From NCBI GenBank assembly GCA_028826165.1, contig JAPDFW010000123.1, forward strand, positions 1 through 64,000: DNA of 64,000 bases, in the 5' to 3' direction. A model generated the notes under the pieces. That model was not told the origin of the DNA. It saw nothing but the letters and a program-made list of their open reading frames with translations, and made no database searches. The position numbers and the translations under genes are program-made. Below are positions 1,108-21,400 of this stretch, in pieces (position 1 is the first letter of the stretch; the number at the start of each line of letters is the position of its first letter). This DNA comes from Anaeramoeba ignava BMAN (taxonomy: Eukaryota > Protista > Anaeramoebae).

Positions 1108-1584
1108 ATGCAAAATTTAACATTAAAAATTTTAACTTCAAAACCAAAAGAAGCAAGATTAATAACAAAAAGTGTGTTTTCAATAGCTCAAAGATTTTTA
1201 ACAACGTATTACACAAAAGCACACGAATACATCAAGATTGATGAAGGAAAAGACAGTGGAAAATGCGGAATTTCAGATCATGCACAACAAGAATTAGGTG
1301 ACGTTGTATTTGTAGATTTGCCGGAAAAGGGAAGAAAAATTTCAAAAGGTGAACTTTCTGGAGCCGTTGAAAGTGTTAAAGCAGTTGGCAATTTTTATGC
1401 CCCCGTTTCCGGCAAAATTATTTCTGTTAATTCTGAACTTGAATCTACTCCTTCTTTGATTAATTCTCAACCTGAGGATAATGGTTGGATTATTGAGGTT
1501 CAATTGGATGATAAATCAGAAATTAATCAACTTATGAATCCTGAACAATACAAGAAATTTTTAGCTGAAGAATCTCATAAATAA
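1108..1584 (+). CDS. GCSH: Glycine cleavage system H protein with N-terminal organellar (mitochondrion-related organelle) presequence
   Basis: Motifs YTKAHEYI, GISDHAQQELGDVVFVDLP, lipoyl-lysine VESVKA and LINSQPEDNGWI; basic/hydroxylated ~30-aa N-terminal extension; single exon. Confidence 0.96.
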   Translation: MQNLTLKILTSKPKEARLITKSVFSIAQRFLTTYYTKAHEYIKIDEGKDSGKCGISDHAQQELGDVVFVDLPEKGRKISKGELSGAVESVKAVGNFYAPVSGKIISVNSELESTPSLINSQPEDNGWIIEVQLDDKSEINQLMNPEQYKKFLAEESHK

Positions 1585-1787
1585 GTTTTTTTTTTTTTTT
1601 TTACTTTTTTTTTTTCTTTTCATCAACTTTTTTTTTTTCTTTTCATCAACAAATTTTTTTTTTACTTTTGAGAAAAAATAAAAAAAAGTGGAACAAACAA
1701 ATCTTATTTAAAAATCTTATTTAAAAATTTAATTTAAAAATTTAATTTAAAAATTTAATTTAAATTCTTATTTTATTTTATTTAAAA

Positions 1788-4700
1788 TTAGAAAAATTTT
1801 CCAAATAATAATTCTCCACTTTCTAATCCTGCAAGTAAATTTTTTTCATTTCCTAAAAATGATAAAAATCTAATTGAATTTTTAACTTCAAAATGAGAAA
1901 CTAATTTCAAATCAATAATTTGTCTAATTTGAATAACACCTTGTTGACTTCCTGTAAATAAATATTGGGAATTATTAGAAGTAATCCAAGAATGAATAAT
2001 TTGGGAAGTGTCAACAATCTTTAGCAATTTTGCATTAATACTAAATAAATATATAGACAAGTCCTTATTGGAATAAATCAAGATATATCCATTATTTATA
2101 ATTTTAATCATTGAAGGAGAAATTCGTTTTGATTCATGAAGAAAAAATGAACGGACATAACTTCCGAGTTGAGCGGTTTGAATATTGCAAGTTCCATCAA
2201 GAGAGCCACTTACAACAACATCCAGTTGATAGTTCACATCAACACATGAAACTTCATCGTTATGTCCGTATAAAATATGCATTGGTTTTTCTAATACTTT
2301 TCCTTTTGTGACCTGAAGCTTCCAAACAATAACTGTTGTGTCTCTTGATCCAGTGACCAAGAGATCATCATCCAACGCCAAACAAGTCACTATGTCTTTG
2401 TGATGGGAAATTGACTGTTTTAGTTTGAATGTCTCTGTATTGTAAATTTTAAAACTGTTGTCCCAATATCCGCAAATAATAATATTTTTTTCATTTTTTG
2501 TAACTGCAAAACAAATGCTAAATTGCGTGATTCCAAAAGCAAAAGAAACGCCAATTCTTTGCGTTGATTTTTTGATCGATGTTTCCATCGATATTTGTGA
2601 ATAATATTGATCGTCTTTGCTTTCTGTTGTTGGATTGATCAAATCCAGTGTTTTTCTTTTTAATTGTGGAGTTTGTGATGAAAATCCACTTTCCAATTTT
2701 TCATTTGAATTTGTTTGAGAAAATGTTCTTGATGGGAAATATGATGATTTGCTTATTGCCAATGAGGGAGAATGTTTGGCTTTTGTTTGGTTTATTCCTG
2801 GTTGATTCATGAAATTTCTTATAAAATGCAAATATCGATTTTTATCAAACACAATCAATTTTGTTTTAAAATTCACAAACAAAATTTTTGATTTTGTCAA
2901 CGTAATACAACTTGATCTGAACTTTGTTTTCGCATCAATTTCCCAATAAAAAGGCGATGCATTTACTTCTGATAAGGATAATCTTTTTGGATGAGGTTTT
3001 TTAAATATTTGAGTTGGTGTTTGACCAAAATAACGAACTTGTTCTTCAATTGATTGTTTTTGATGTTCGTTTTGGATTGAATCAATTTCAATTGAATTTT
3101 CATATGTTAAATAGTGGAAAACATTATAAGCTTTGACTGCTTCTTCTCCTTGTTGTTTGTATCCAAAAATCAAGTCAATCCATTCATTCAAATGTTGAGA
3201 AACATATTCACTTTCTAAAGCTTTTCTATTCATCCATATATATTCATCTGGGGTTTTTGCCCATGGAGGCAATATAACATTTCCAATTAATTCCCCCGTT
3301 TGTTTTTTTCCCAAGTTAAAGTTATTTGAGTTTTCTAGAAATTCAGGGAAAAAATAAAATTCTGGTATTAATTCTTTAACATCTGATTGACTTGTTAAAC
3401 AACTTTCCCAAGTTGTTGGAAGTGAATGGAAAACTCTATCAGCAATATCGAATTTTCCACCTTGCATTTCTATAAATAATGAAGTGAATGGTTCGATACG
3501 TATTAAGTAGAATAAAACGCCACCTAAAATAAAATACATTTTAAATTAATAATTTAATAAATTTTGAATTAAATCAATAAATCAAATATTTAAATCTTGA
3601 ATTAAATCAAATAAATTCATTTTAAATCTTTAATTCAAATAAATTAAATTCCAAATCTTTAATTCAATTAAAATAAATTCCAAATCTTTAATTAAATAAA
3701 TTAAATTCATTTTAAATCTTTAATTCAAATTAAATTAAATTCATTTCAAATCTTTAAATTAATTAAATTAATTAAATTCATTTCAAATCTTTAATTAAAT
3801 TAAATTCATTTTAAATCTTTAATTCAAATTAAATTAATTAAATTCATTTTAAATCTTTAATTGAATTAAATTAATTAAATTCATTCCAAATCTTTAATTG
3901 AATTAAATTAAATTAAATTCATTCCAAATCTTGAATTAAATTAAAATAATTAAATTCATTTTAAATCTTTAATTAAATTAAATTCATTTTCAAATCTTCA
4001 AATCAATTAAATTCATTTCAAATCTTAAATTAAATTAAATTAATTAAATTCATTTTAAATCTTTAATTAAAATAAATTGATTAAATTCATTTTAAATCTT
4101 TAATTAAATTAAATTCAAATTAAATTCATTTTTAAATCTTGAATAAATTAAAATAAATTCATTCCAAATCTTTTAATTAAATTTAATTAAAATTTCCAAA
4201 TCTTAAATTAATTAAATTCATTTCAAATCTTTAATTGAATTAAATTGAATTAAATTCATTTTCAAATCTTTAAATTTAAATTAATTAAATTCATTTCAAA
4301 TAATTAAATAAATCTTCAAATAAATTAAATTAAATTGATTAAATTCTTTTTAAATCTTCAAATTAATTAAATTCATTTCAAATCTTTAATTAAAATAAAT
4401 TAATTAAATTCATTTTAAATCTCCAAATAAATAAATTCATTTTAAATCTTCAAATCAATTAAATTGATTAAATTCATTTTAAATCTTTAATTGAATTAAA
4501 TTAAATTAATTCATTTCAAATCTTTAATTGAATTAAATTAATTAAATTCATTTCAAATCTTTAATTGAATTAAATTAATTAAATTCATTTCAAATAATTG
4601 AATTAAATTAATTAAATTCATTTCAAATAATTGAATTAAATTGATTAAATTCATTTCAAATAATAAAATTAAATAAATCTTTAATTGAATTAAATTAAAT

Positions 4701-15613: not shown

Positions 15614-18373
15614 CTATTTCTTTAATAATTTAGCAATCTGTTTTTGAAAAGTTGAATAATGAGAAAATTGATAAAAATCATCAGCATCTTTTAATTCTTC
15701 AATAACTGATTTAGGTGTTGATTCATTAATTTCATCAGTATATAAAAATTCAACAAGACATTTAAGTGCATAAATTGTTTTTCCACGATAATCAGAAACA
15801 GAATTTGAATCATCATTAACATTCAAAAACATTCCTCGAAATAAATCACTTCTTGCTGCCAAAACTAACTTATGAACCTTAATTTCTTTATTTCCTGCTT
15901 TCAATAAAAAATCCTTTGTTGATTCATCTTCATAAAGTTTCTTCAAATCTTCCAAAAACCCTTTTTTTCTACCTTTTCTTCCAATCCATTTTTCAATATC
16001 TTTTGGATTTTCTAAAATTTCATTTAGAATTTGTTTGATTTTTTCTTGTGAAGTTGAATCAATTTGTCCTGAATATAAAAATTTTAAAAATGGAAGAATT
16101 TCTTCTTTTTTCTTATTTTGTGAAATTTCAATTAATTTAGTAATTTTTTCATAATTTTTATCTTCAAGTCTTTTTTCAACAATTAATTTATGAGCTTTTA
16201 ATTCTCCATCTAAACATTTAATTTGAATATCTGTAAATTCTTCTCTTTTTAAAAAATTTTTCCAATCACTACAAATATTAATTTGAAAAAATTCTAATAT
16301 TTCTTCATTTTTAACTTCTTCTTCTGGTTTTTTTCCCTTATTTTATTTTATTATTTTTGAAACAAACCAAACCAAACAAAGAATATTTCAATCTTTTTTT
16401 AATAAGAAAAATGAATGAATGAATAAATAATTTTTGTTTTACATTCTAATTATTTAAATCAATTATTTAAAATTATTATTATTGAAAAAAATTTATTTAA
16501 TTTACATTCTTTTTATAAATAAAAATACAAATTAATTTTAATTATTTCTTGATACTTTTTCTTTTTAAAATTTAAAAAAAAAACATTTTTCAATTCAACA
16601 TCTGCTCCAAATAATATTAATAAAGAAATAATTTCATAATTAAATGTATTTTGACGAACTAAATAATGAAGAGCTGAATCATTCTTGAAAATTAAATGAA
16701 AAATTAAATTAATTTTCAATCTAAAAAAAATAATAAAAGAAATAATTTTACAGACTAAATCCAAAATTAAAATTAAAATTCAAACAAAAATAAAATTAAT
16801 TTACATTCTAAAATAATTTAAAATTTAAAATTTAAAATTAAAATTTAAAATTTAAAATTTAAAATTAAAATTTAAAATTTAAAATTAGTTTTTTTTACAG
16901 AAACACAATTAACATCTGCATTTCCTTCTAATAAATATTCAAAAATTTCTATTGGAGAAGGTTTTTGAGCAGCATAAAGTAAAGGTGAATAATTCTTTAT
17001 TTTTATATTTTTTTAATTTTTAAATTTTTTAAATTTGATTTTGATTTTGATTTTTATTATTTTTACTCCCTTTTTTTTTTGTTTGAAAATTTCAAATTAA
17101 ATTTTATAAATTCTTTTGTTTTTGTTTTGTGTAAATAATTTTTAATAAAAAAAATAATACAAACTAAATTTGAAATTTTAATTTTATTTAAATTTTTTTT
17201 AACAAAAAATTGTGTTTTTTTTACACCCTTTTATATTTTTTTTTTCAATAATAAAATATAAAATATAAAATATAAATTTACGGACTTAAAATATTATAAT
17301 AATTATTATTATAAGAAAATATTATAATTATTATTAAAAGAAAATAAAATAATTATTATTAAAAGAAAATATTATAATTATTATTAAAAGAAAATATTAT
17401 AATTATTATTAAAAGGAAATATTATAATTATTATTATAAGAAAATATAATAATTATTATTAAAAGAAAATATTATAATTATTATTAAAAGAAAATATTAT
17501 AATTATTATTAAAAGAAAATATAATTATTATTATAAGGAAATATTATAATTATTATTAAAAGAAAATATTATAATTATTATTAAAAGAAAATATTATAAT
17601 TATTATTAAAAGAAAATATTGATAATATACAGTTGTATGATTAATATTTGCTCCATTATCAATTAAAAATTTTACAGAAAGAGGATCTCCTCCATACCAA
17701 ATTAAATAAAATATTGGTGTTTCCCTCTAAAAATTTGATTAAAAAAAAATTAATTAATGAATTAAGAAAAAAAAATTATAATAAAAATAAACCCACTAAT
17801 TAATTAAAATGAAATTAAATACAATAAAAACAATGAATAAAAAACTTTCTTGGTTAATTTATAAATAAATTCAAATAAGTTTTTTTTACTCTCTAAAATT
17901 AAAAAAATGAGAAGAAAATTTTTGATATTTTATTTTTTTAAGAAAATTTGTAAAAAAAATATAAACATTAGGTTGATTAATATCAATTCCAAAATCAATT
18001 AATAATTTAAGTAATTCATTTGTAGGTTGATTTCTACAAGCTAAATGTAGTAAATTTTCATTCTATTAAAGAAATTAAAAAAACAAGAAAAAATTTTTAA
18101 TTAAAAAATAAAATATTTACATCCTTTTAAAAATGAATAATAAATTTAAAAAGAAGAAATCAATAAATTTTAAATTATAAATATTTTATTATTGAAAAAT
18201 TTGATTACATTCTAAATTTAAAAAATTTAATAAAATTAAAATTTAAAAATTAAAATTTATATATTTTTTTTTACAAGAGGAAAAGTAGTTGAATTTTTAA
18301 GTAATTTTTGGATTTCTTGAAGATGTTTATTTTCTTTTCCATTTCCTTTTATTAAACTATCAATATTACTCAT
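15614..18373 (-). CDS. Ankyrin-repeat + tandem BTB protein (~414 aa) built from 6 ordinary exons and 12 single-codon micro-exons
   Basis: Ordinary exons are 18373-18275 (33 codons), 18062-17967, 17726-17631, 16994-16899 (32 codons each), 16683-16585 (33 codons) and 16336-15614, all phase 0 with GT-AG. The four middle exons are each one ankyrin repeat (e.g. NENLLHLACRNQPTNELLKLLIDFGIDINQPN). The last exon has two BTB-like units (FTDIQI...AHKLIV; TKDFLL...VHKLVLAARSDLFRGMF). Confidence 0.9.
16443..16508 (-). other. 3-nt micro-exon pair 5: AAT (Asn, 16508-16506) and AAT (Asn, 16445-16443)
   Basis: aaaAG-AAT-GTaaat and attAG-AAT-GTaaaa; flanking introns 76, 60 and 106 nt. Inclusion gives GADVELKN-N-N-GKKP, the canonical ankyrin N-x-x-G-x-x-P hairpin. 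Confidence 0.85.
16752..16807 (-). other. 3-nt micro-exon pair 4: AAT (Asn, 16807-16805) and TCT (Ser, 16754-16752)
   Basis: tttAG-AAT-GTaaat and tttAG-TCT-GTaaaa; flanking introns 91, 50 and 68 nt. Confidence 0.82.
17067..17284 (-). other. 3-nt micro-exon quartet: TCC (Ser, 17284-17282), GGT (Gly, 17227-17225), TTT (Phe, 17163-17161), GGA (Gly, 17069-17067)
   Basis: ttaAG-TCC-GTaaat, aaaAG-GGT-GTaaaa, tttAG-TTT-GTatta and aaaAG-GGA-GTaaaa; flanking introns 346, 54, 61, 91 and 72 nt. Confidence 0.82.
17290..17620. repeat. ~23-bp tandem repeat (AAAGAAAATATTATAATTATTATTA-like) inside intron 7 of the ankyrin-BTB gene
   Basis: Directly visible tandem copies that expand one intron to 346 nt. Confidence 0.85.
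17793..17892 (-). other. 3-nt micro-exon pair 2: AGA (Arg, 17892-17890) and TGG (Trp, 17795-17793); possible third, AAA (Lys, 17848-17846)
   Basis: tttAG-AGA-GTaaaa and attAG-TGG-GTttat; flanking introns 74, 94 and 66 nt. ccaAG-AAA-GTtttt would split the 94-nt intron into 41+50 nt and is less certain. Confidence 0.82.
18121..18211 (-). other. 3-nt micro-exon pair 1: AAT (Asn, 18211-18209) and GAT (Asp, 18123-18121)
   Basis: Minus strand reads tttAG-AAT-GTaatc and aaaAG-GAT-GTaaat; flanking introns 63, 85 and 58 nt. Confidence 0.82.
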
Positions 18374-18473
18374 TGAAATAAATTTTAAAAATGAAAAAAA
18401 TGAATTTTATTTTTTTCATTTTTTTCATTTTTTTCATTTTTTTCATTTTCAAAATTTTTTTTTAATTAATTAA
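18374..18473. promoter_or_regulatory. Compact bidirectional promoter (ankyrin-BTB / RasGAP genes)
   Basis: 100 bp between divergent ATGs; two AAAATGA followed by four TCATTTT copies. Confidence 0.65.
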
Positions 18474-21400
18474 ATGCAACATCGATTTCGTTTTGAACGT
18501 ATTTTTAGTACTCCTAAACATCTTTTAAAAGATAAGTATCAAAAATCAAATCTTTCTTTTTCACAAGAAAATTTAGACTTTGAAACTGAAGGAGAAAGTT
18601 TACAACTTTTACAAGAAATACTTGAAGAGCAAAAAAAAAAACAGGAAGAATTAAAACTAAAATTAAAAAAAAAACAAGAAGAAATTCAACAAAATAGTTT
18701 TCAGTTTAAAAAGAATCAAAAAAAAACTTTAAATTGTTTTGATTTTACTTCTTTAAGTCATAAAATGTCAAATGAATTTAGAAAAAATACAAAGAAATTT
18801 TTGTTCAGTTATTCAATTTATAGATAATGAATTTTTAAATGAAAAACAAGACAAAAGATAAAATTATTCCCAAAATATGTCCAAATATAGATTTAAGACC
18901 AAATATTGTTTCTGTAAAAAAATTCGAAAAAAAATGAAATGAATTTTAATTGAAAATTTTTTAATTAGAATTTTTCTTTGTTTTTTTGCTAAAAAAAAAA
19001 TAAGAATTTTATAACAAGAATTGATCAAAACAATTATTTTTGAATCTTTCAAAAATTGTCTTATTCAAAATGAAGTTTCTTTTAATGACAAATTATCTCA
19101 TTCACTAATTCATTTTATCAAAATTTCTTTTAATGAAAAAGAACAAAAACCACCTTTAATTATTCATAAAGAAATTATTCAAAAAATATCTGAAATCAAT
19201 AATATTCAAATTCAAGAAAAATCAACTTTAGATTTGGAATTATTATCAATTATCCTATTTTTTCATTTTTCTTATAATTTCTATCTTGATTTGACTTCAG
19301 AAATTATTGAATCTTTGAAAAATGATTCACTTGATAATGGTTTGTTTTTATTTTAAAATGAATCATTTTTTTTAAATTTGAACTGAATTAAGAAAAACAA
19401 AAACAAAAACAAAAACAAAAATTTAGAAGGATATGATAATTTGCATTTAATTTTAAAAGATTTCTTTATGGAAAATTTCAAAGGCATTTTTCAATTTGCA
19501 AATATTGAAGATTTATTATTAGAATATTTATATCGAATTGGAGTAGAAAATGCAGAAAATGTTTGAATATTTTAATTTGATTTTTTTCTATCCAAAAAAA
19601 AAAAAACAAAATAATTTATAAATTTAAAACAAATTTAGAAAACGGAGGAAATATTATCAAAAGTAATGAAGAAAAATTTGGGGAATTCAATAAAAGCTAT
19701 AATTGAATATTTATTTGAAGAAGAAGAAAAGAAACTTATAAGTAAATTTTATGAAACAAAAATGGAAGAATTCCCAGATGGAGATGCAAATTTAATAAGA
19801 GAAGATAAAGATCGGTTTTATTTTTTGAAAAGTCTTTCAAAAGCGAAAAAAATACTTAAAAAATATTTAACTGAAGAAGATATATGCTATTTTACATCAG
19901 CAACAAATCAAAATGTGTCAAGAAATTCAATGGAGCCTTTATCAACTTTGCTATGCAATTTAATACAATCTTTGGGAATAACTCTTCCATTTATCAAAGC
20001 AATAATTTTTGCAGAATCAGAATCAACAATTTTAAAAGGAAGTTTATTTAGATCAAATAATTTTTGCTCAAAAGTTTTGTCAAAAATCACATTTCGATAT
20101 GGAAAAAAATGGATATACACAACTTTATATTCTGTTGTTAAGGAAATTACACAATCAGAAGGATCTTTTGAAATTGATGAGTTTGAAGTTGTTAATGAAG
20201 ATGATTTGAAGGAAAATGTCCAAAATTTAACGTTGTTTTCTCAAAAAGTGATGGATTCAATCATCCAAAATCTTCAAAAAGTTCCAGAAATTTTGAAAAT
20301 TATTTGCTATTATTTAAAATTGGCAACTGAATCAAAATTTCCTGAACTTGTTTTGAATGTGTTAAGCGGCTTTTTCTTTTTGAGATTTATTTGTTCTGCT
20401 CTTGCAACTCCTTTACGTTATGAAATTGTGAATTGTATTTTGAAAAATCAATATAAAAATTTATATAAAAATTTATCAAAAAACAACAACAAAAAAAAAA
20501 CATAAATAATTTGATCAGCAAAATTAAATGAAGAATCAAATGAAGCTCTTTTAGCAATTTCTTCTGTAGTTCAATCTTGGTCAAGTGGAATAAATTTTCA
20601 TTCAGATAATCAATATTTAGTAGATTTAAATAATTTACTTAAAACTAAATATTCGAACAGAGAAGAATTATTACTTCAACTTTCAGTAATAAATTCAAAT
20701 ATCATCAACGAAAAAAAAAAGAAACAAAAAAAAAATATATTCATAATCCAATTATTTTCTATGTTTCTTATTTAATTAGGATATCAAAGAAATTGATAAG
20801 AAAAAACTTAAAAAAAATGCAGATTATGGCATTGTTTATATTTCTTCACATCATGCTAATAAAATACCTAAATTGGCAAGTAAATTAAGAAAGCAAACAT
20901 ATAATTATCTTTTTGATAAGAAATTTTTTTTCCCAGAAAATTCAAGAAAGGAAATTGAAGAAGTTCAATTAAAAATGCAAAATATTATTCAAAATTTTGA
21001 AGGATTTTCAGAAAAAATTACAGAAAATATTATATCAATTCCTGATATTTATCAAAATGTGATTGAAAGTGGGAAATATTATTATATTCCTAAAGAAAAT
21101 GAAGAAAATCAAGAAAATCAAATTAAAGAAAATCAAGAAAATCAAATTAAAGAAAATCAAGAAAATCAAATTAAAGAAAATCAAGAAAATCAAGAAAATG
21201 AAGAAATTAATGAAAATCAAATTCAAGAAAATCAAATTCAAGAAATTAATTTATCATTGTTAAATTTTTGGCAACAACTTCAATTACTTCCTTTATCATT
21301 TCAAATGGATTGTTTTTTTAAAAAAATTGAGGATATTGAATGGAACAAAGGATTAATTCAATTAAGATTAAATTTTTTAATGGTTTTTAGTGAAAATTGT

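What the first reader, a model, noticed from the sequence alone, without database searches (positions are those of the whole stretch)
15614..18373. Tandem single-codon (3-nt) micro-exons encode the variable beta-hairpin tips of an ankyrin-BTB protein
Seen in sequence: on the minus strand each ankyrin repeat is one 96-99-nt phase-0 exon. The apparently long introns between them are divided into mostly 50-106-nt introns by exact AG-NNN-GT islands. There are 12: N,D | R,W | S,G,F,G | N,S | N,N, at 18211, 18123, 17892, 17795, 17284, 17227, 17163, 17069, 16807, 16754, 16508 and 16445. G is very rare in these introns, so repeated AG-NNN-GT with exactly 3 nt, never a stop codon, and normal intron spacing is hard to explain by chance. 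The spliced product reads ...INQPN-R-W-RETPIFY...INHTT-S-G-F-G-NYSPLLY...VNCVS-N-S-NDSALHY...VELKN-N-N-GKKP. Established knowledge: the ankyrin consensus is D/N-x-x-G-x-T-P-L-H, and the two x residues at the hairpin tip are main target-contact positions, among those randomised in DARPin libraries. The large exons lack those two residues and the micro-exons supply them one codon at a time. BTB domains recruit Cullin-3. Inference: every unit is phase 0, so any inclusion or skipping pattern keeps the frame. The gene could therefore generate or rapidly evolve a combinatorial set of binding surfaces, like a natural splice-encoded DARPin library, on a ubiquitin-ligase adaptor, for example for symbiont, virus or substrate recognition. 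Isolated 3-nt exons are known, but I know of no description of serial one-codon exon arrays mapped onto binding residues.
Basis: partly seen in the sequence, partly recalled or inferred. Interest (0 to 1): 0.97.

Follow-up and report, generated by a model that had tools for sequence, protein, structure and literature searches.

The report
One-codon exons encode ankyrin hairpin tips
In the anaerobic amoeba Anaeramoeba ignava this ankyrin-BTB gene hides twelve three-base exons, two or four between each pair of ankyrin repeats, that supply loop-tip residues missing from the published gene model; transcripts of two sister genes show that such exons are really spliced in.

Summary
The gene (window 15614-18373, minus strand) is Anaeramoeba ignava KAJ5067926.1, whose 402-aa model joins six large exons directly. 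Its five "introns" hold 13 AG-NNN-GT islands; dinucleotide shuffles give 0.55. Twelve have family-typical splice sites, none is a stop, and they cut the introns into 50-106-nt pieces (one of 346 nt is swollen by a tandem repeat); the genome's intron mode is 76 nt. In 43 paralogues (window gene included), about 70% of 119 inter-ankyrin introns hold exactly two islands (232 three-base islands against 8-24 for other spacings). Direct evidence comes from two paralogues. Their transcriptome-derived ORFs equal the genome models except for 2-residue inserts at five junctions. Eight of those residues match the genomic islands codon for codon; the locus of the second paralogue was not read. Intronless paralogues carry two extra residues at the same places. 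With them the loop has canonical ankyrin spacing, and the residues sit at the hairpin tips.

Combinatorial splicing has no support so far: all five observed junctions are fully included. No RNA run was listed for the window gene itself. Other first-stage notes flag the same architecture elsewhere in this genome. I found no published description of it.

The parts
18275..18373 (-). Exon 1 (99 nt, 33 codons, ATG at 18373), N-terminal cap; donor GTAAAA at 18274
   Evidence: equals residues 1-33 of annotated P0001
18209..18211 (-). Micro-exon 1, AAT (N); tttag|AAT|gtaatc
   Evidence: acceptor 7.4, donor 5.9 bits; sub-introns 63 and 85 nt
18121..18123 (-). Micro-exon 2, GAT (D); aaaag|GAT|gtaaat
   Evidence: acceptor 5.9, donor 8.1 bits; next sub-intron 58 nt
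17967..18062 (-). Exon 2 (96 nt), ankyrin repeat NENLLHLA...DINQPN
   Evidence: Ank_3 1.2e-6, Ank 1.5e-4
17890..17892 (-). Micro-exon 3, AGA (R)
   Evidence: acceptor 7.4, donor 6.7 bits; upstream sub-intron 74 nt
17846..17848 (-). Extra AG-AAA-GT island, probably chance and not an exon
   Evidence: acceptor 2.4 and donor 2.4 bits, both below the family's 5th percentile; would give 41- and 50-nt introns
17793..17795 (-). Micro-exon 4, TGG (W); donor GTTTAT is the weakest of the twelve
   Evidence: acceptor 6.8, donor 3.6 bits; sub-introns 94 and 66 nt
17631..17726 (-). Exon 3 (96 nt), ankyrin repeat RETPIFY...NINHTT
   Evidence: Ank 2.9e-3
17295..17626 (-). 25-nt x 13.4 tandem repeat that inflates the first sub-intron of intron 3 to 346 nt
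17282..17284 (-). Micro-exon 5, TCC (S)
   Evidence: acceptor 5.6, donor 8.0 bits
17225..17227 (-). Micro-exon 6, GGT (G)
   Evidence: acceptor 3.7, donor 6.7 bits; sub-intron 54 nt
17161..17163 (-). Micro-exon 7, TTT (F)
   Evidence: acceptor 6.7, donor 5.5 bits; sub-intron 61 nt
17067..17069 (-). Micro-exon 8, GGA (G). This loop has four islands; whether all four or only two are used is open
   Evidence: acceptor 4.4, donor 7.2 bits; sub-introns 91 and 72 nt
16899..16994 (-). Exon 4 (96 nt), ankyrin repeat NYSPLLY...DVNCVS
   Evidence: Ank 1.2e-4
16805..16807 (-). Micro-exon 9, AAT (N)
   Evidence: acceptor 6.3, donor 7.4 bits; sub-intron 91 nt
16752..16754 (-). Micro-exon 10, TCT (S)
   Evidence: acceptor 5.4, donor 7.4 bits; sub-introns 50 and 68 nt
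16585..16683 (-). Exon 5 (99 nt), ankyrin repeat NDSALHY...DVELKN
   Evidence: Ank 9.9e-4
16506..16508 (-). Micro-exon 11, AAT (N)
   Evidence: acceptor 5.3, donor 7.4 bits; sub-intron 76 nt
16443..16445 (-). Micro-exon 12, AAT (N). Same junction (last ankyrin to BTB linker) as the KS insert seen in transcript ORF P0286
   Evidence: sub-introns 60 and 106 nt
15614..16336 (-). Exon 6 (723 nt with TAG stop): linker GKKPEEE..., a degenerate first BTB-like domain and a clear second BTB/POZ domain
   Evidence: BTB 4.2e-20; KLHL26, KBTBD2/4, SPOP BTB at E 3e-5 to 8e-3; two BTB-like folds in the paralogue model

Best explanation
The gene encodes an ankyrin-repeat plus double-BTB protein of Anaeramoeba ignava. 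It belongs to a family of more than 150 paralogues. Each ankyrin repeat is one 96-99-nt exon that ends just after the D/N of the loop and resumes at the G-x-T-P-L-H position. The two residues at the tip of each beta-hairpin are each encoded by a separate 3-nt phase-0 exon, flanked by ordinary short introns of about 50-100 nt with GTAAA donors and TTTAG or AAAAG acceptors. In one loop of this gene there are four such exons.

Shown: the architecture, its conservation, and the inclusion of such exons in mRNA of two paralogues. The published 402-aa model skips all of them. The real product is most likely 412-414 aa; I counted this but did not build the sequence.

Inferred: this genome's introns are short and recognised as units (intron definition), so exon size is not limiting. 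A 3-nt exon cannot carry a 3' splice-site complex and a U1-bound donor at the same time, so the flanking introns are probably removed one after another, as in recursive splicing, except that the three bases stay in the mRNA.

Also inferred: the exons are constitutive, and the protein is an ABTB-like substrate adaptor whose ankyrin groove binds a target. The architecture is old and spread by duplication of whole repeat modules and genes, not by recent local intron triplication.
For: Window gene:
- 13 islands against 0.55 expected.
- 12 have family-typical splice scores, none is a stop, and sub-introns match the genome's intron mode of 76 nt.

Family (43 genes, window gene included, 119 inter-ankyrin introns, 34,264 nt):
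- 83 introns hold exactly two islands, and about 74% do once five overlap artefacts are removed.
- AG-N3-GT occurs 232 times against 8-24 for other spacings.
- 16 of 24 last-ankyrin-to-BTB introns also hold two.
- 166 micro-exon codons contain 0 stops against 18 expected (P 5e-9). Their G+C is 18% against 10.6% in introns. K/N/D come first and Y/N/K/D second, as in the ankyrin consensus.

Transcripts:
- EukProt ORF P0016 (374 aa, TransDecoder header) equals NCBI model P0006 (366 aa) except for inserts QE, KV, YM and MF at the four junctions. The genome (L026) has CAA, GAA | AAA, GTT | TAT, ATG | ATG, TTT as AG-NNN-GT islands in exactly those introns and in that order.
- P0286 (616 aa) equals P0093 (614 aa) plus KS at the last-ankyrin/BTB junction.

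Other:
- An intronless paralogue (L008) has two extra residues at each junction of P0001 and P0002.
- Ank_2 scores 71.6 bits with the residues and 60.9 without.
- In the AlphaFold model (pLDDT 92.9) the residues lie at the hairpin tips, and the model overlays DARPins at 1.1-1.5 A.
- Genome-wide, paired islands 40-70 nt apart number 935 for 3 nt, against 121 for 2 nt and 93 for 4 nt.
- Sub-introns at the same position of other repeats in one gene share more 9-mers (0.051) than sub-introns within one intron (0.032) or across genes (0.028).
- One junction of an A. flamelloides homologue has the same pair of islands.
Against: - There is no RNA evidence for the window gene itself. No RNA run was listed, and its 90% cluster holds no transcriptome ORF.
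- AlphaFold folds the paralogue equally well without the residues (pLDDT 92.3 against 92.9), so structure does not demand inclusion.
- Intron 3 has four islands, which would give a loop two residues longer than canonical.
- The TGG island has a weak donor (3.6 bits).
- Only two assembled transcripts, five junctions in all, were seen. An assembled ORF shows a dominant form, not the absence of others.
- Sequential splicing and intron definition are inferred, not observed.
Confidence: 0.85

Rival explanations
1. One reading: the one-codon exons are cassette exons used in varying combinations. Each gene would then make many isoforms with different hairpin tips, a splice-encoded diversity library on a ubiquitin-ligase adaptor.
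For: - Every unit is phase 0, so any subset keeps the frame.
- AlphaFold folds the paralogue with or without the residues.
- Some loops hold more islands than the canonical two: four in intron 3 here, and 10, 10 and 4 in the kinase-ankyrin gene on L003.
- In the BTB-TLDc arrays (L002, L004) nearly identical introns separate variable triplets that are almost all N-T-N. In phase 1 this gives only NNT codons, which stay stop-free whatever is joined.
Against: - All five junctions seen in transcript-derived ORFs include both codons.
- Most loops hold exactly two islands, which is the canonical loop length.
- The residues follow the ordinary ankyrin consensus, K/N/D then N/Y/K/D.
- Intronless paralogues hard-wire two residues at the same place.
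- No isoform data exist.
Confidence: 0.1
2. In this particular gene the islands are leftovers of the family architecture that are no longer used. The annotated 402-aa direct-join product would be the real one, or the gene is silent or decaying.
For: - No transcript of this gene was found.
- The nearest paralogue is only 44% identical, so conservation of these exact codons cannot be tested.
- The direct-join model folds in silico for the paralogue.
Against: - All 12 islands keep intact AG and GT, exact 3-nt spacing, good splice scores and no stop codon, in introns of 7.5-11.7% G+C where unused sites should decay.
- All large exons and the BTB exon are intact open frames.
Confidence: 0.04
3. The islands are chance matches, or recursive-splicing ratchet sites that help remove long introns without leaving anything in the mRNA.
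For: The introns are AT-rich and low in complexity. Recursive sites (AG|GT) are known in Drosophila long introns (own knowledge).
Against: - 13 islands were observed against 0.55 expected, with a maximum of 4 in 2,000 shuffles.
- Zero-length AG|GT sites are not enriched: 2 in the gene and 8 in the family introns, against 232 three-base islands.
- The three bases are retained in two paralogue transcripts.
Confidence: 0.01

Closest known systems
Ultra-short micro-exons of animals and plants, for example the 3-bp exon of Drosophila homothorax (PMC7392893), the 3-nt exon of cytohesin-1 (PMC6314551), RPS24 with 3-, 18- and 22-bp micro-exons (PMC12207440), and plant 1-15-nt micro-exons and 'microexon clusters' (PMC8831610)
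   Same: Internal coding exons of a few bases with canonical GT-AG flanks. They are routinely missed by aligners and gene predictors, so annotated proteins lack residues. Plants have adjacent micro-exons (5 + 12 nt in rice), and intronless paralogues carry the same bases inside a large exon.
   Different: Here the exons are always one codon and come in tandem pairs, or in runs of 4 to 10. The pair recurs at the same structural position of every repeat of a repeat protein, across more than 100 paralogous genes, in a protist whose introns have a mode of 76 nt. I found no paper that describes serial one-codon exons, and none on micro-exons in Anaeramoeba.
Recursive splicing (ratchet points, AG|GT) of long introns
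   Same: A composite 'intron' is removed in several steps through internal acceptor-donor sites. A 3-nt exon probably forces the same kind of ordered, stepwise removal (inference).
   Different: Ratchet points leave nothing in the mRNA, whereas here three bases are kept each time. The pieces are ordinary short introns, not segments of very long ones.
ABTB1/BPOZ-type proteins (ankyrin repeats followed by two BTB domains) and BTB Cullin-3 substrate adaptors such as KLHL, KBTBD and SPOP
   Same: The domain order is an ankyrin block followed by two BTB-like folds. The second BTB matches KLHL26, KBTBD2/4, KLHL22, SPOP and KLHL3.
   Different: Similarity is weak (E 3e-5 to 8e-3). No BACK or 3-box was examined and no Cul3 contact was tested. 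The resemblance to ABTB1 is recalled from memory, not tested.
DARPin libraries (designed ankyrin repeat proteins)
   Same: The micro-exon residues correspond to the two positions after the loop D, which are among the positions randomised in DARPins (established knowledge). The paralogue's ankyrin domain overlays DARPins at rmsd 1.1-1.5 A with 33-38% identity.
   Different: There is no evidence that the cell varies these positions within one gene. The diversity seen is between paralogues, as in any ankyrin family.
Arrays of mutually exclusive exons (Dscam1-type), and introner elements (families of near-identical introns)
   Same: Elsewhere in this genome, long arrays of near-identical 72-85-nt intron units are separated by variable triplets. 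These recall both systems.
   Different: In the ankyrin-BTB gene of this window the introns are all different, and the count per loop fits constitutive use. Mutually exclusive use and intron mobility were not tested.

Membership tests
Micro-exon (internal exon of 30 nt or less, spliced into mature mRNA) | Flanked by a functional acceptor (AG) and donor (GT), with introns of viable size on both sides | tested here: met
   12 islands have splice scores within the family range and sub-introns of 50-346 nt. The genome's intron mode is 76 nt and its shortest annotated intron is 35 nt.
Micro-exon (internal exon of 30 nt or less, spliced into mature mRNA) | The bases are present in mature RNA | tested here: inconclusive
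   Met for two paralogues: P0016 against P0006, with 8 codons matched to genomic islands, and P0286 against P0093. Not testable for the window gene, because no RNA run was listed and no transcriptome ORF is in its cluster.
Micro-exon (internal exon of 30 nt or less, spliced into mature mRNA) | Evolutionary conservation of the exon beyond what neutral intron sequence would show | tested here: met
   Exactly two islands in about 70-74% of 119 inter-ankyrin introns of paralogues that are about 40% identical. There are 0 stops in 166 codons against 18 expected. The same pair occurs at one junction in A. flamelloides.
Ankyrin repeat (Pfam PF00023 / PF12796) | Significant match to the repeat profiles, and a 33-residue-type helix-loop-helix-hairpin fold | tested here: met
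   E2-E5 each hit Ank or Ank_3. P0001 scores Ank_2 at 1.2e-18. The paralogue model overlays DARPins.
Ankyrin repeat (Pfam PF00023 / PF12796) | Canonical loop spacing N-x-x-D-x-x-G-x-T-P-L-H (N to T = 8) | tested here: met
   Read from the sequence, spacing is 6 in the annotated direct-join models and 8 when two micro-exon codons are counted. Intron 3 of the window gene would give 10 if all four are used.
BTB/POZ domain (PF00651) | Significant profile match above the gathering score | tested here: met
   72.4 bits against a cut-off of 20.5 for exon 6.
Cullin-3 substrate adaptor | BTB dimer with Cul3-binding surface and 3-box, and physical binding to Cul3 | not tested
   Only weak sequence similarity to the BTB domains of KLHL, KBTBD and SPOP adaptors. 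No complex prediction was run, and the A. ignava Cul3 was not sought.
Alternatively spliced cassette exons or a combinatorial diversifier | Two or more isoforms that differ in inclusion of the exons | not testable with these tools
   Only one assembled ORF per gene is on record. Both show full inclusion at 5 of 5 junctions.

The most novel reading that the evidence does not exclude
The unit 'one codon plus one short intron' may be an evolvable and possibly selectable module in Anaeramoeba. Binding loops of very large BTB-adaptor families would grow, shrink or vary by adding, losing or alternatively using single-codon exons. The families are ankyrin-BTB (more than 150 genes) and BTB-TLDc (more than 250 hits). 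Observed loop sizes are 2, 4 and 10 codons in ankyrin loops, and 7 to dozens of codons between near-identical introns in TLDc loops, where N-T-N triplets in phase 1 stay stop-free in any combination. If alternative use is real, this would be a splice-based diversification system for recognition surfaces in a protist, with no described counterpart.
Probability: 0.15. Interest if true: 0.95.

Novelty: new variant of a known kind. Interest (0 to 1): 0.82.

Why it matters
- It shows that a spliceosome can routinely handle tandem exons of a single codon, two to ten in a row and hundreds of times in one genome. This tests current ideas on minimal exon size, intron definition and the order of intron removal.
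- More than a hundred published Anaeramoeba gene models are wrong in a systematic way, each lacking two residues per ankyrin repeat. At least one A. flamelloides model is mis-spliced at such a site.
- Standard pipelines such as HISAT2 plus ab initio predictors cannot see these exons, so the same thing may be hidden in other AT-rich protists with short introns.
- It gives a concrete system for asking how introns come to sit at consecutive codon boundaries.
- It also allows a test of whether one-codon exons are used to vary binding loops.

Tried and rejected
- RNA evidence for the window gene: the look-up of sequencing runs listed no run.
- The look-up of encoding contigs held no record for P0002 or P0003.
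- A profile search with 41 family members found only NCBI models and no transcriptome ORFs.
- A search with the BTB-TLDc ORF of L004 found more than 250 NCBI proteins but no transcriptome ORF, so use of the long arrays stays untested.
- The first and last cluster-member runs each gave one informative pair; the second gave none.
- The transcriptome ORF P0003 starts inside the BTB exon and says nothing about the upstream micro-exons of its gene.
- AlphaFold with and without the residues did not discriminate (pLDDT 92.9 against 92.3). No support either way for obligatory inclusion.
- Local triplication of one intron as the origin is not supported. Sub-introns of one composite intron are no more alike than unrelated ones.
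I did not try to get them another way. For the same reason the genomic islands behind the KS insert of P0286 were not checked.
- I did not build, search or fold the joined spliced model of the window gene with its micro-exons. Exons were searched one by one by reference, and only database proteins were folded.
- My first in-frame reading of the L002 triplets as I/M/L is probably wrong. The NCBI model of the L004 gene shows phase 1 there.
Full report
**What the window is.** The window is about 20% G+C. The last exon of the gene is 100% identical to NCBI KAJ5067926.1, "ankyrin repeat-containing protein [Anaeramoeba ignava]" (P0001, 402 aa). That model is exactly the direct join of six large minus-strand exons, 33+32+32+32+33+240 codons. 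A. ignava BMAN has 80.65% A+T overall. Its annotated introns have 8.14% G+C, a mode of 76 nt and a median of 102 nt (PMC11550330 and its supplement).

**Checking the observation.**
A thirteenth, AAA at 17848, has poor sites.
- Within the gene, 3-nt islands occur 16 times against 0-4 for every other spacing from 0 to 9.
- In the five introns there are 13 islands, against 0.55 +/- 0.73 (maximum 4) in 2,000 dinucleotide shuffles.
- Nothing comparable occurs elsewhere in the 64 kb.
- The islands carry strong contexts (TTTAG or AAAAG, then NNN, then GTAAA). They divide the 212-636-nt "introns" into pieces of 50-106 nt. One piece of 346 nt is inflated by a 25-nt tandem repeat.

**Paralogues.**
- The ankyrin plus double-BTB family has more than 150 members in this genome.
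- In the genes of P0002 and P0003, every complete inter-ankyrin intron read holds exactly two islands.
- I fetched 40 further loci and found ankyrin exons with an iterated HMM. Across the 43 genes thus held (window gene included), 119 inter-ankyrin introns were scored. Of these, 83 hold exactly two islands. The share is about 74% after removing five cases where a GTTTGT-type donor makes an overlapping false third island.
- In those 34,264 nt, AG-N3-GT occurs 232 times, against 8-24 for other spacings.
- The sub-intron median is 70 nt, and the large exon is mostly 96 nt.
- The intron between the last ankyrin and the BTB exon holds two islands in 16 of 24 genes.
- The 166 codons from two-island introns include no stop (18 expected, P 5e-9). 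They are richer in G+C than the introns (18% against 10.6%). They favour K/N/D at the first position and Y/N/K/D at the second, as in the ankyrin consensus DKNG.
- Genome-wide, island pairs 40-70 nt apart with GTAA donors number 935 for 3 nt, 121 for 2 nt and 93 for 4 nt.

**Direct transcript evidence.**
- The 90% cluster of NCBI model P0006 (366 aa) also holds P0016 (374 aa). P0016 is a EukProt entry whose TransDecoder-style header marks it as an ORF from an assembled transcript.
- The two are identical except for four 2-residue inserts, QE, KV, YM and MF, exactly at the ankyrin exon junctions.
- In the genome (L026) those four introns contain AG-CAA-GT and AG-GAA-GT; AAA and GTT; TAT and ATG; ATG and TTT. 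The order matches, and the sub-introns are 58-127 nt. All eight residues are predicted by the islands.
- A second pair, P0093 (614 aa) and P0286 (616 aa, EukProt), differs only by KS inserted at DLNYRD|KS|LKRP. This is the last-ankyrin/BTB junction, the same position as intron 5 of the window gene.
- So tandem one-codon exons are spliced into mRNA in this family, and at all five junctions seen both codons are present.

**Independent support.**
- An intronless paralogue (865-aa ORF in L008), aligned to the annotated P0002 and P0001, shows 2-residue gaps in the models at or next to most exon junctions.
- Counted on the sequences, the distance from the loop N to the T of TPLH is 6 in the annotated models and 8, the canonical value, once two codons are added.
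- The three-repeat Pfam model Ank_2 scores 71.6 bits on P0016 against 60.9 on P0006.
- AlphaFold gives pLDDT 92.9 for P0016. K66-V67 and Y102-M103 lie between the paired strand residues of the hairpins (E64/E70 and E99/E104). The ankyrin part overlays DARPins at 1.1-1.5 A.
- P0006 folds just as confidently with shorter hairpins (92.3). The fold therefore tolerates both forms, and modelling cannot decide inclusion.

**Beyond this species.** In the A. flamelloides homologue P0005 (L015), two junctions have a single intron with the tip residues inside the large exon. At the third, the genome reads ...GSNVDSRN|gtagcc...ag|AAA|gtaatt...ag|GGA|gtaagt...ag|EYTPLIY, with sub-introns of about 96-130 nt. 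This restores canonical spacing. The annotated model is mis-spliced there.

**Origin.** Sub-introns of one composite intron share no more 9-mers (0.032) than unrelated ones (0.028). Sub-introns at the same position in other repeats of the same gene share more (0.051). This fits an old architecture copied with whole repeat modules and genes. It does not fit recent local triplication. How three introns came to lie at consecutive codon boundaries is unexplained.

**Mechanism (inference).** With introns near the genome's mode, each sub-intron can be recognised as a unit, so exon length is not limiting. A 3-nt exon lies entirely within the exon part of the donor site that pairs with U1, and it abuts the upstream AG. 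Neighbouring introns are therefore probably removed in sequence.

- The position mapping to DARPin-randomised residues is correct.
- Combinatorial use has no support in the data available, and the count of exactly two per loop argues for constitutive exons.
- It is not excluded. Intron 3 here has four good islands. A kinase-ankyrin gene has runs of 10, 10 and 4. BTB-TLDc genes carry arrays of near-identical introns with variable triplets.
- Other first-stage notes on this genome describe the same kinds of arrays. They are unchecked leads and I did not use them as evidence.

**Limits.**
- No RNA run could be listed for the window gene.
- I did not build or search the joined spliced model of the window gene. 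Exons were searched by reference, one by one.

**Literature.** Single 3-nt exons, plant 1-nt exons and pairs of adjacent micro-exons are known (PMC7392893, PMC6314551, PMC8831610). No paper in the searched library describes serial one-codon exons, or micro-exons in Anaeramoeba.

Noticed in passing
L003 = G000:C2:5000-11000, minus strand (locus nt about 1400-3900 on that strand): A gene with a protein-kinase domain followed by ankyrin-like repeats. Its inter-repeat regions hold 10, 10 and 4 consecutive AG-NNN-GTAA islands (K-T-G-W-D-S-G-F-Y-D; K-D-K-D-S-Y-N-R-T-E; G-E-E-D). The introns between them are dissimilar and 57-94 nt long.
   Followed up: partly
L001 = G000:C1:405000-414999, minus strand; also C87:271-278 kb, C137:610-622 kb, C57:593-597 kb, C71:734-735 and 1204-1205 kb, C35:92-93 kb: More than 30 near-identical 72-80-nt intron-like units (GTAAATAATTAAAT...TTTAATAAATAG), each followed by a variable, stop-free triplet, downstream of a coiled-coil-like ORF. 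The unit is a repeat family with at least 487 matches in long arrays. The introns are about 90% alike while the triplets differ, which simple tandem duplication does not explain.
   Followed up: partly
L002 = G000:C1:1055000-1064999 and L004 = G000:C1:940000-945000, minus strand: BTB-TLDc genes, a family with more than 250 hits, have arrays of similar introns inside the TLDc domain between ...GP(S/T)FG and DIALYS.... The triplets are almost all N-T-N. The NCBI model P0165 splices GGA A|gt...ag|AT GAT, which is phase 1, so included triplets would yield NNT codons, never stops. No transcript was found.
   Followed up: partly
L015:3191-3640 (A. flamelloides JANTQA010000023.1, gene of P0005): The annotated model joins GSN directly to EYTPLIY. 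It drops VDSRN and two one-codon islands, AAA and GGA. This is a likely mis-annotation caused by micro-exons in a second species.
   Followed up: partly
L011:1380-1460 (G000:C2, gene of P0003/P0015): NCBI model P0015 starts an exon at the second micro-exon (GAT) and reads through the last 66-nt sub-intron in frame (DVKIKKEKYIISRKLIYISKTK). This is another way these loci are mis-modelled.
   Followed up: no
L016, L043, L047 inter-ankyrin introns: A few introns have a single 6-nt island (TCAAAA, ATTAAT, GAAGAT) instead of two 3-nt islands, as if the middle intron were absent. A few short introns have one island.
   Followed up: no
window 18405-18461: A 9-nt tandem repeat (TTTCATTTT x 5) lies in the 100 nt between this gene's ATG (18373) and the divergently oriented ORF that starts at 18474.
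   Followed up: no
NCBI product names of family members (P0008, P0110, P0113, P0166-P0284): Names such as 'cyclin-dependent kinase inhibitor 2c', 'molting protein mlt-4' and 'pep-cterm sorting domain-containing protein' are attached to ankyrin-BTB and BTB-TLDc proteins. They look like transferred misnomers.
   Followed up: no
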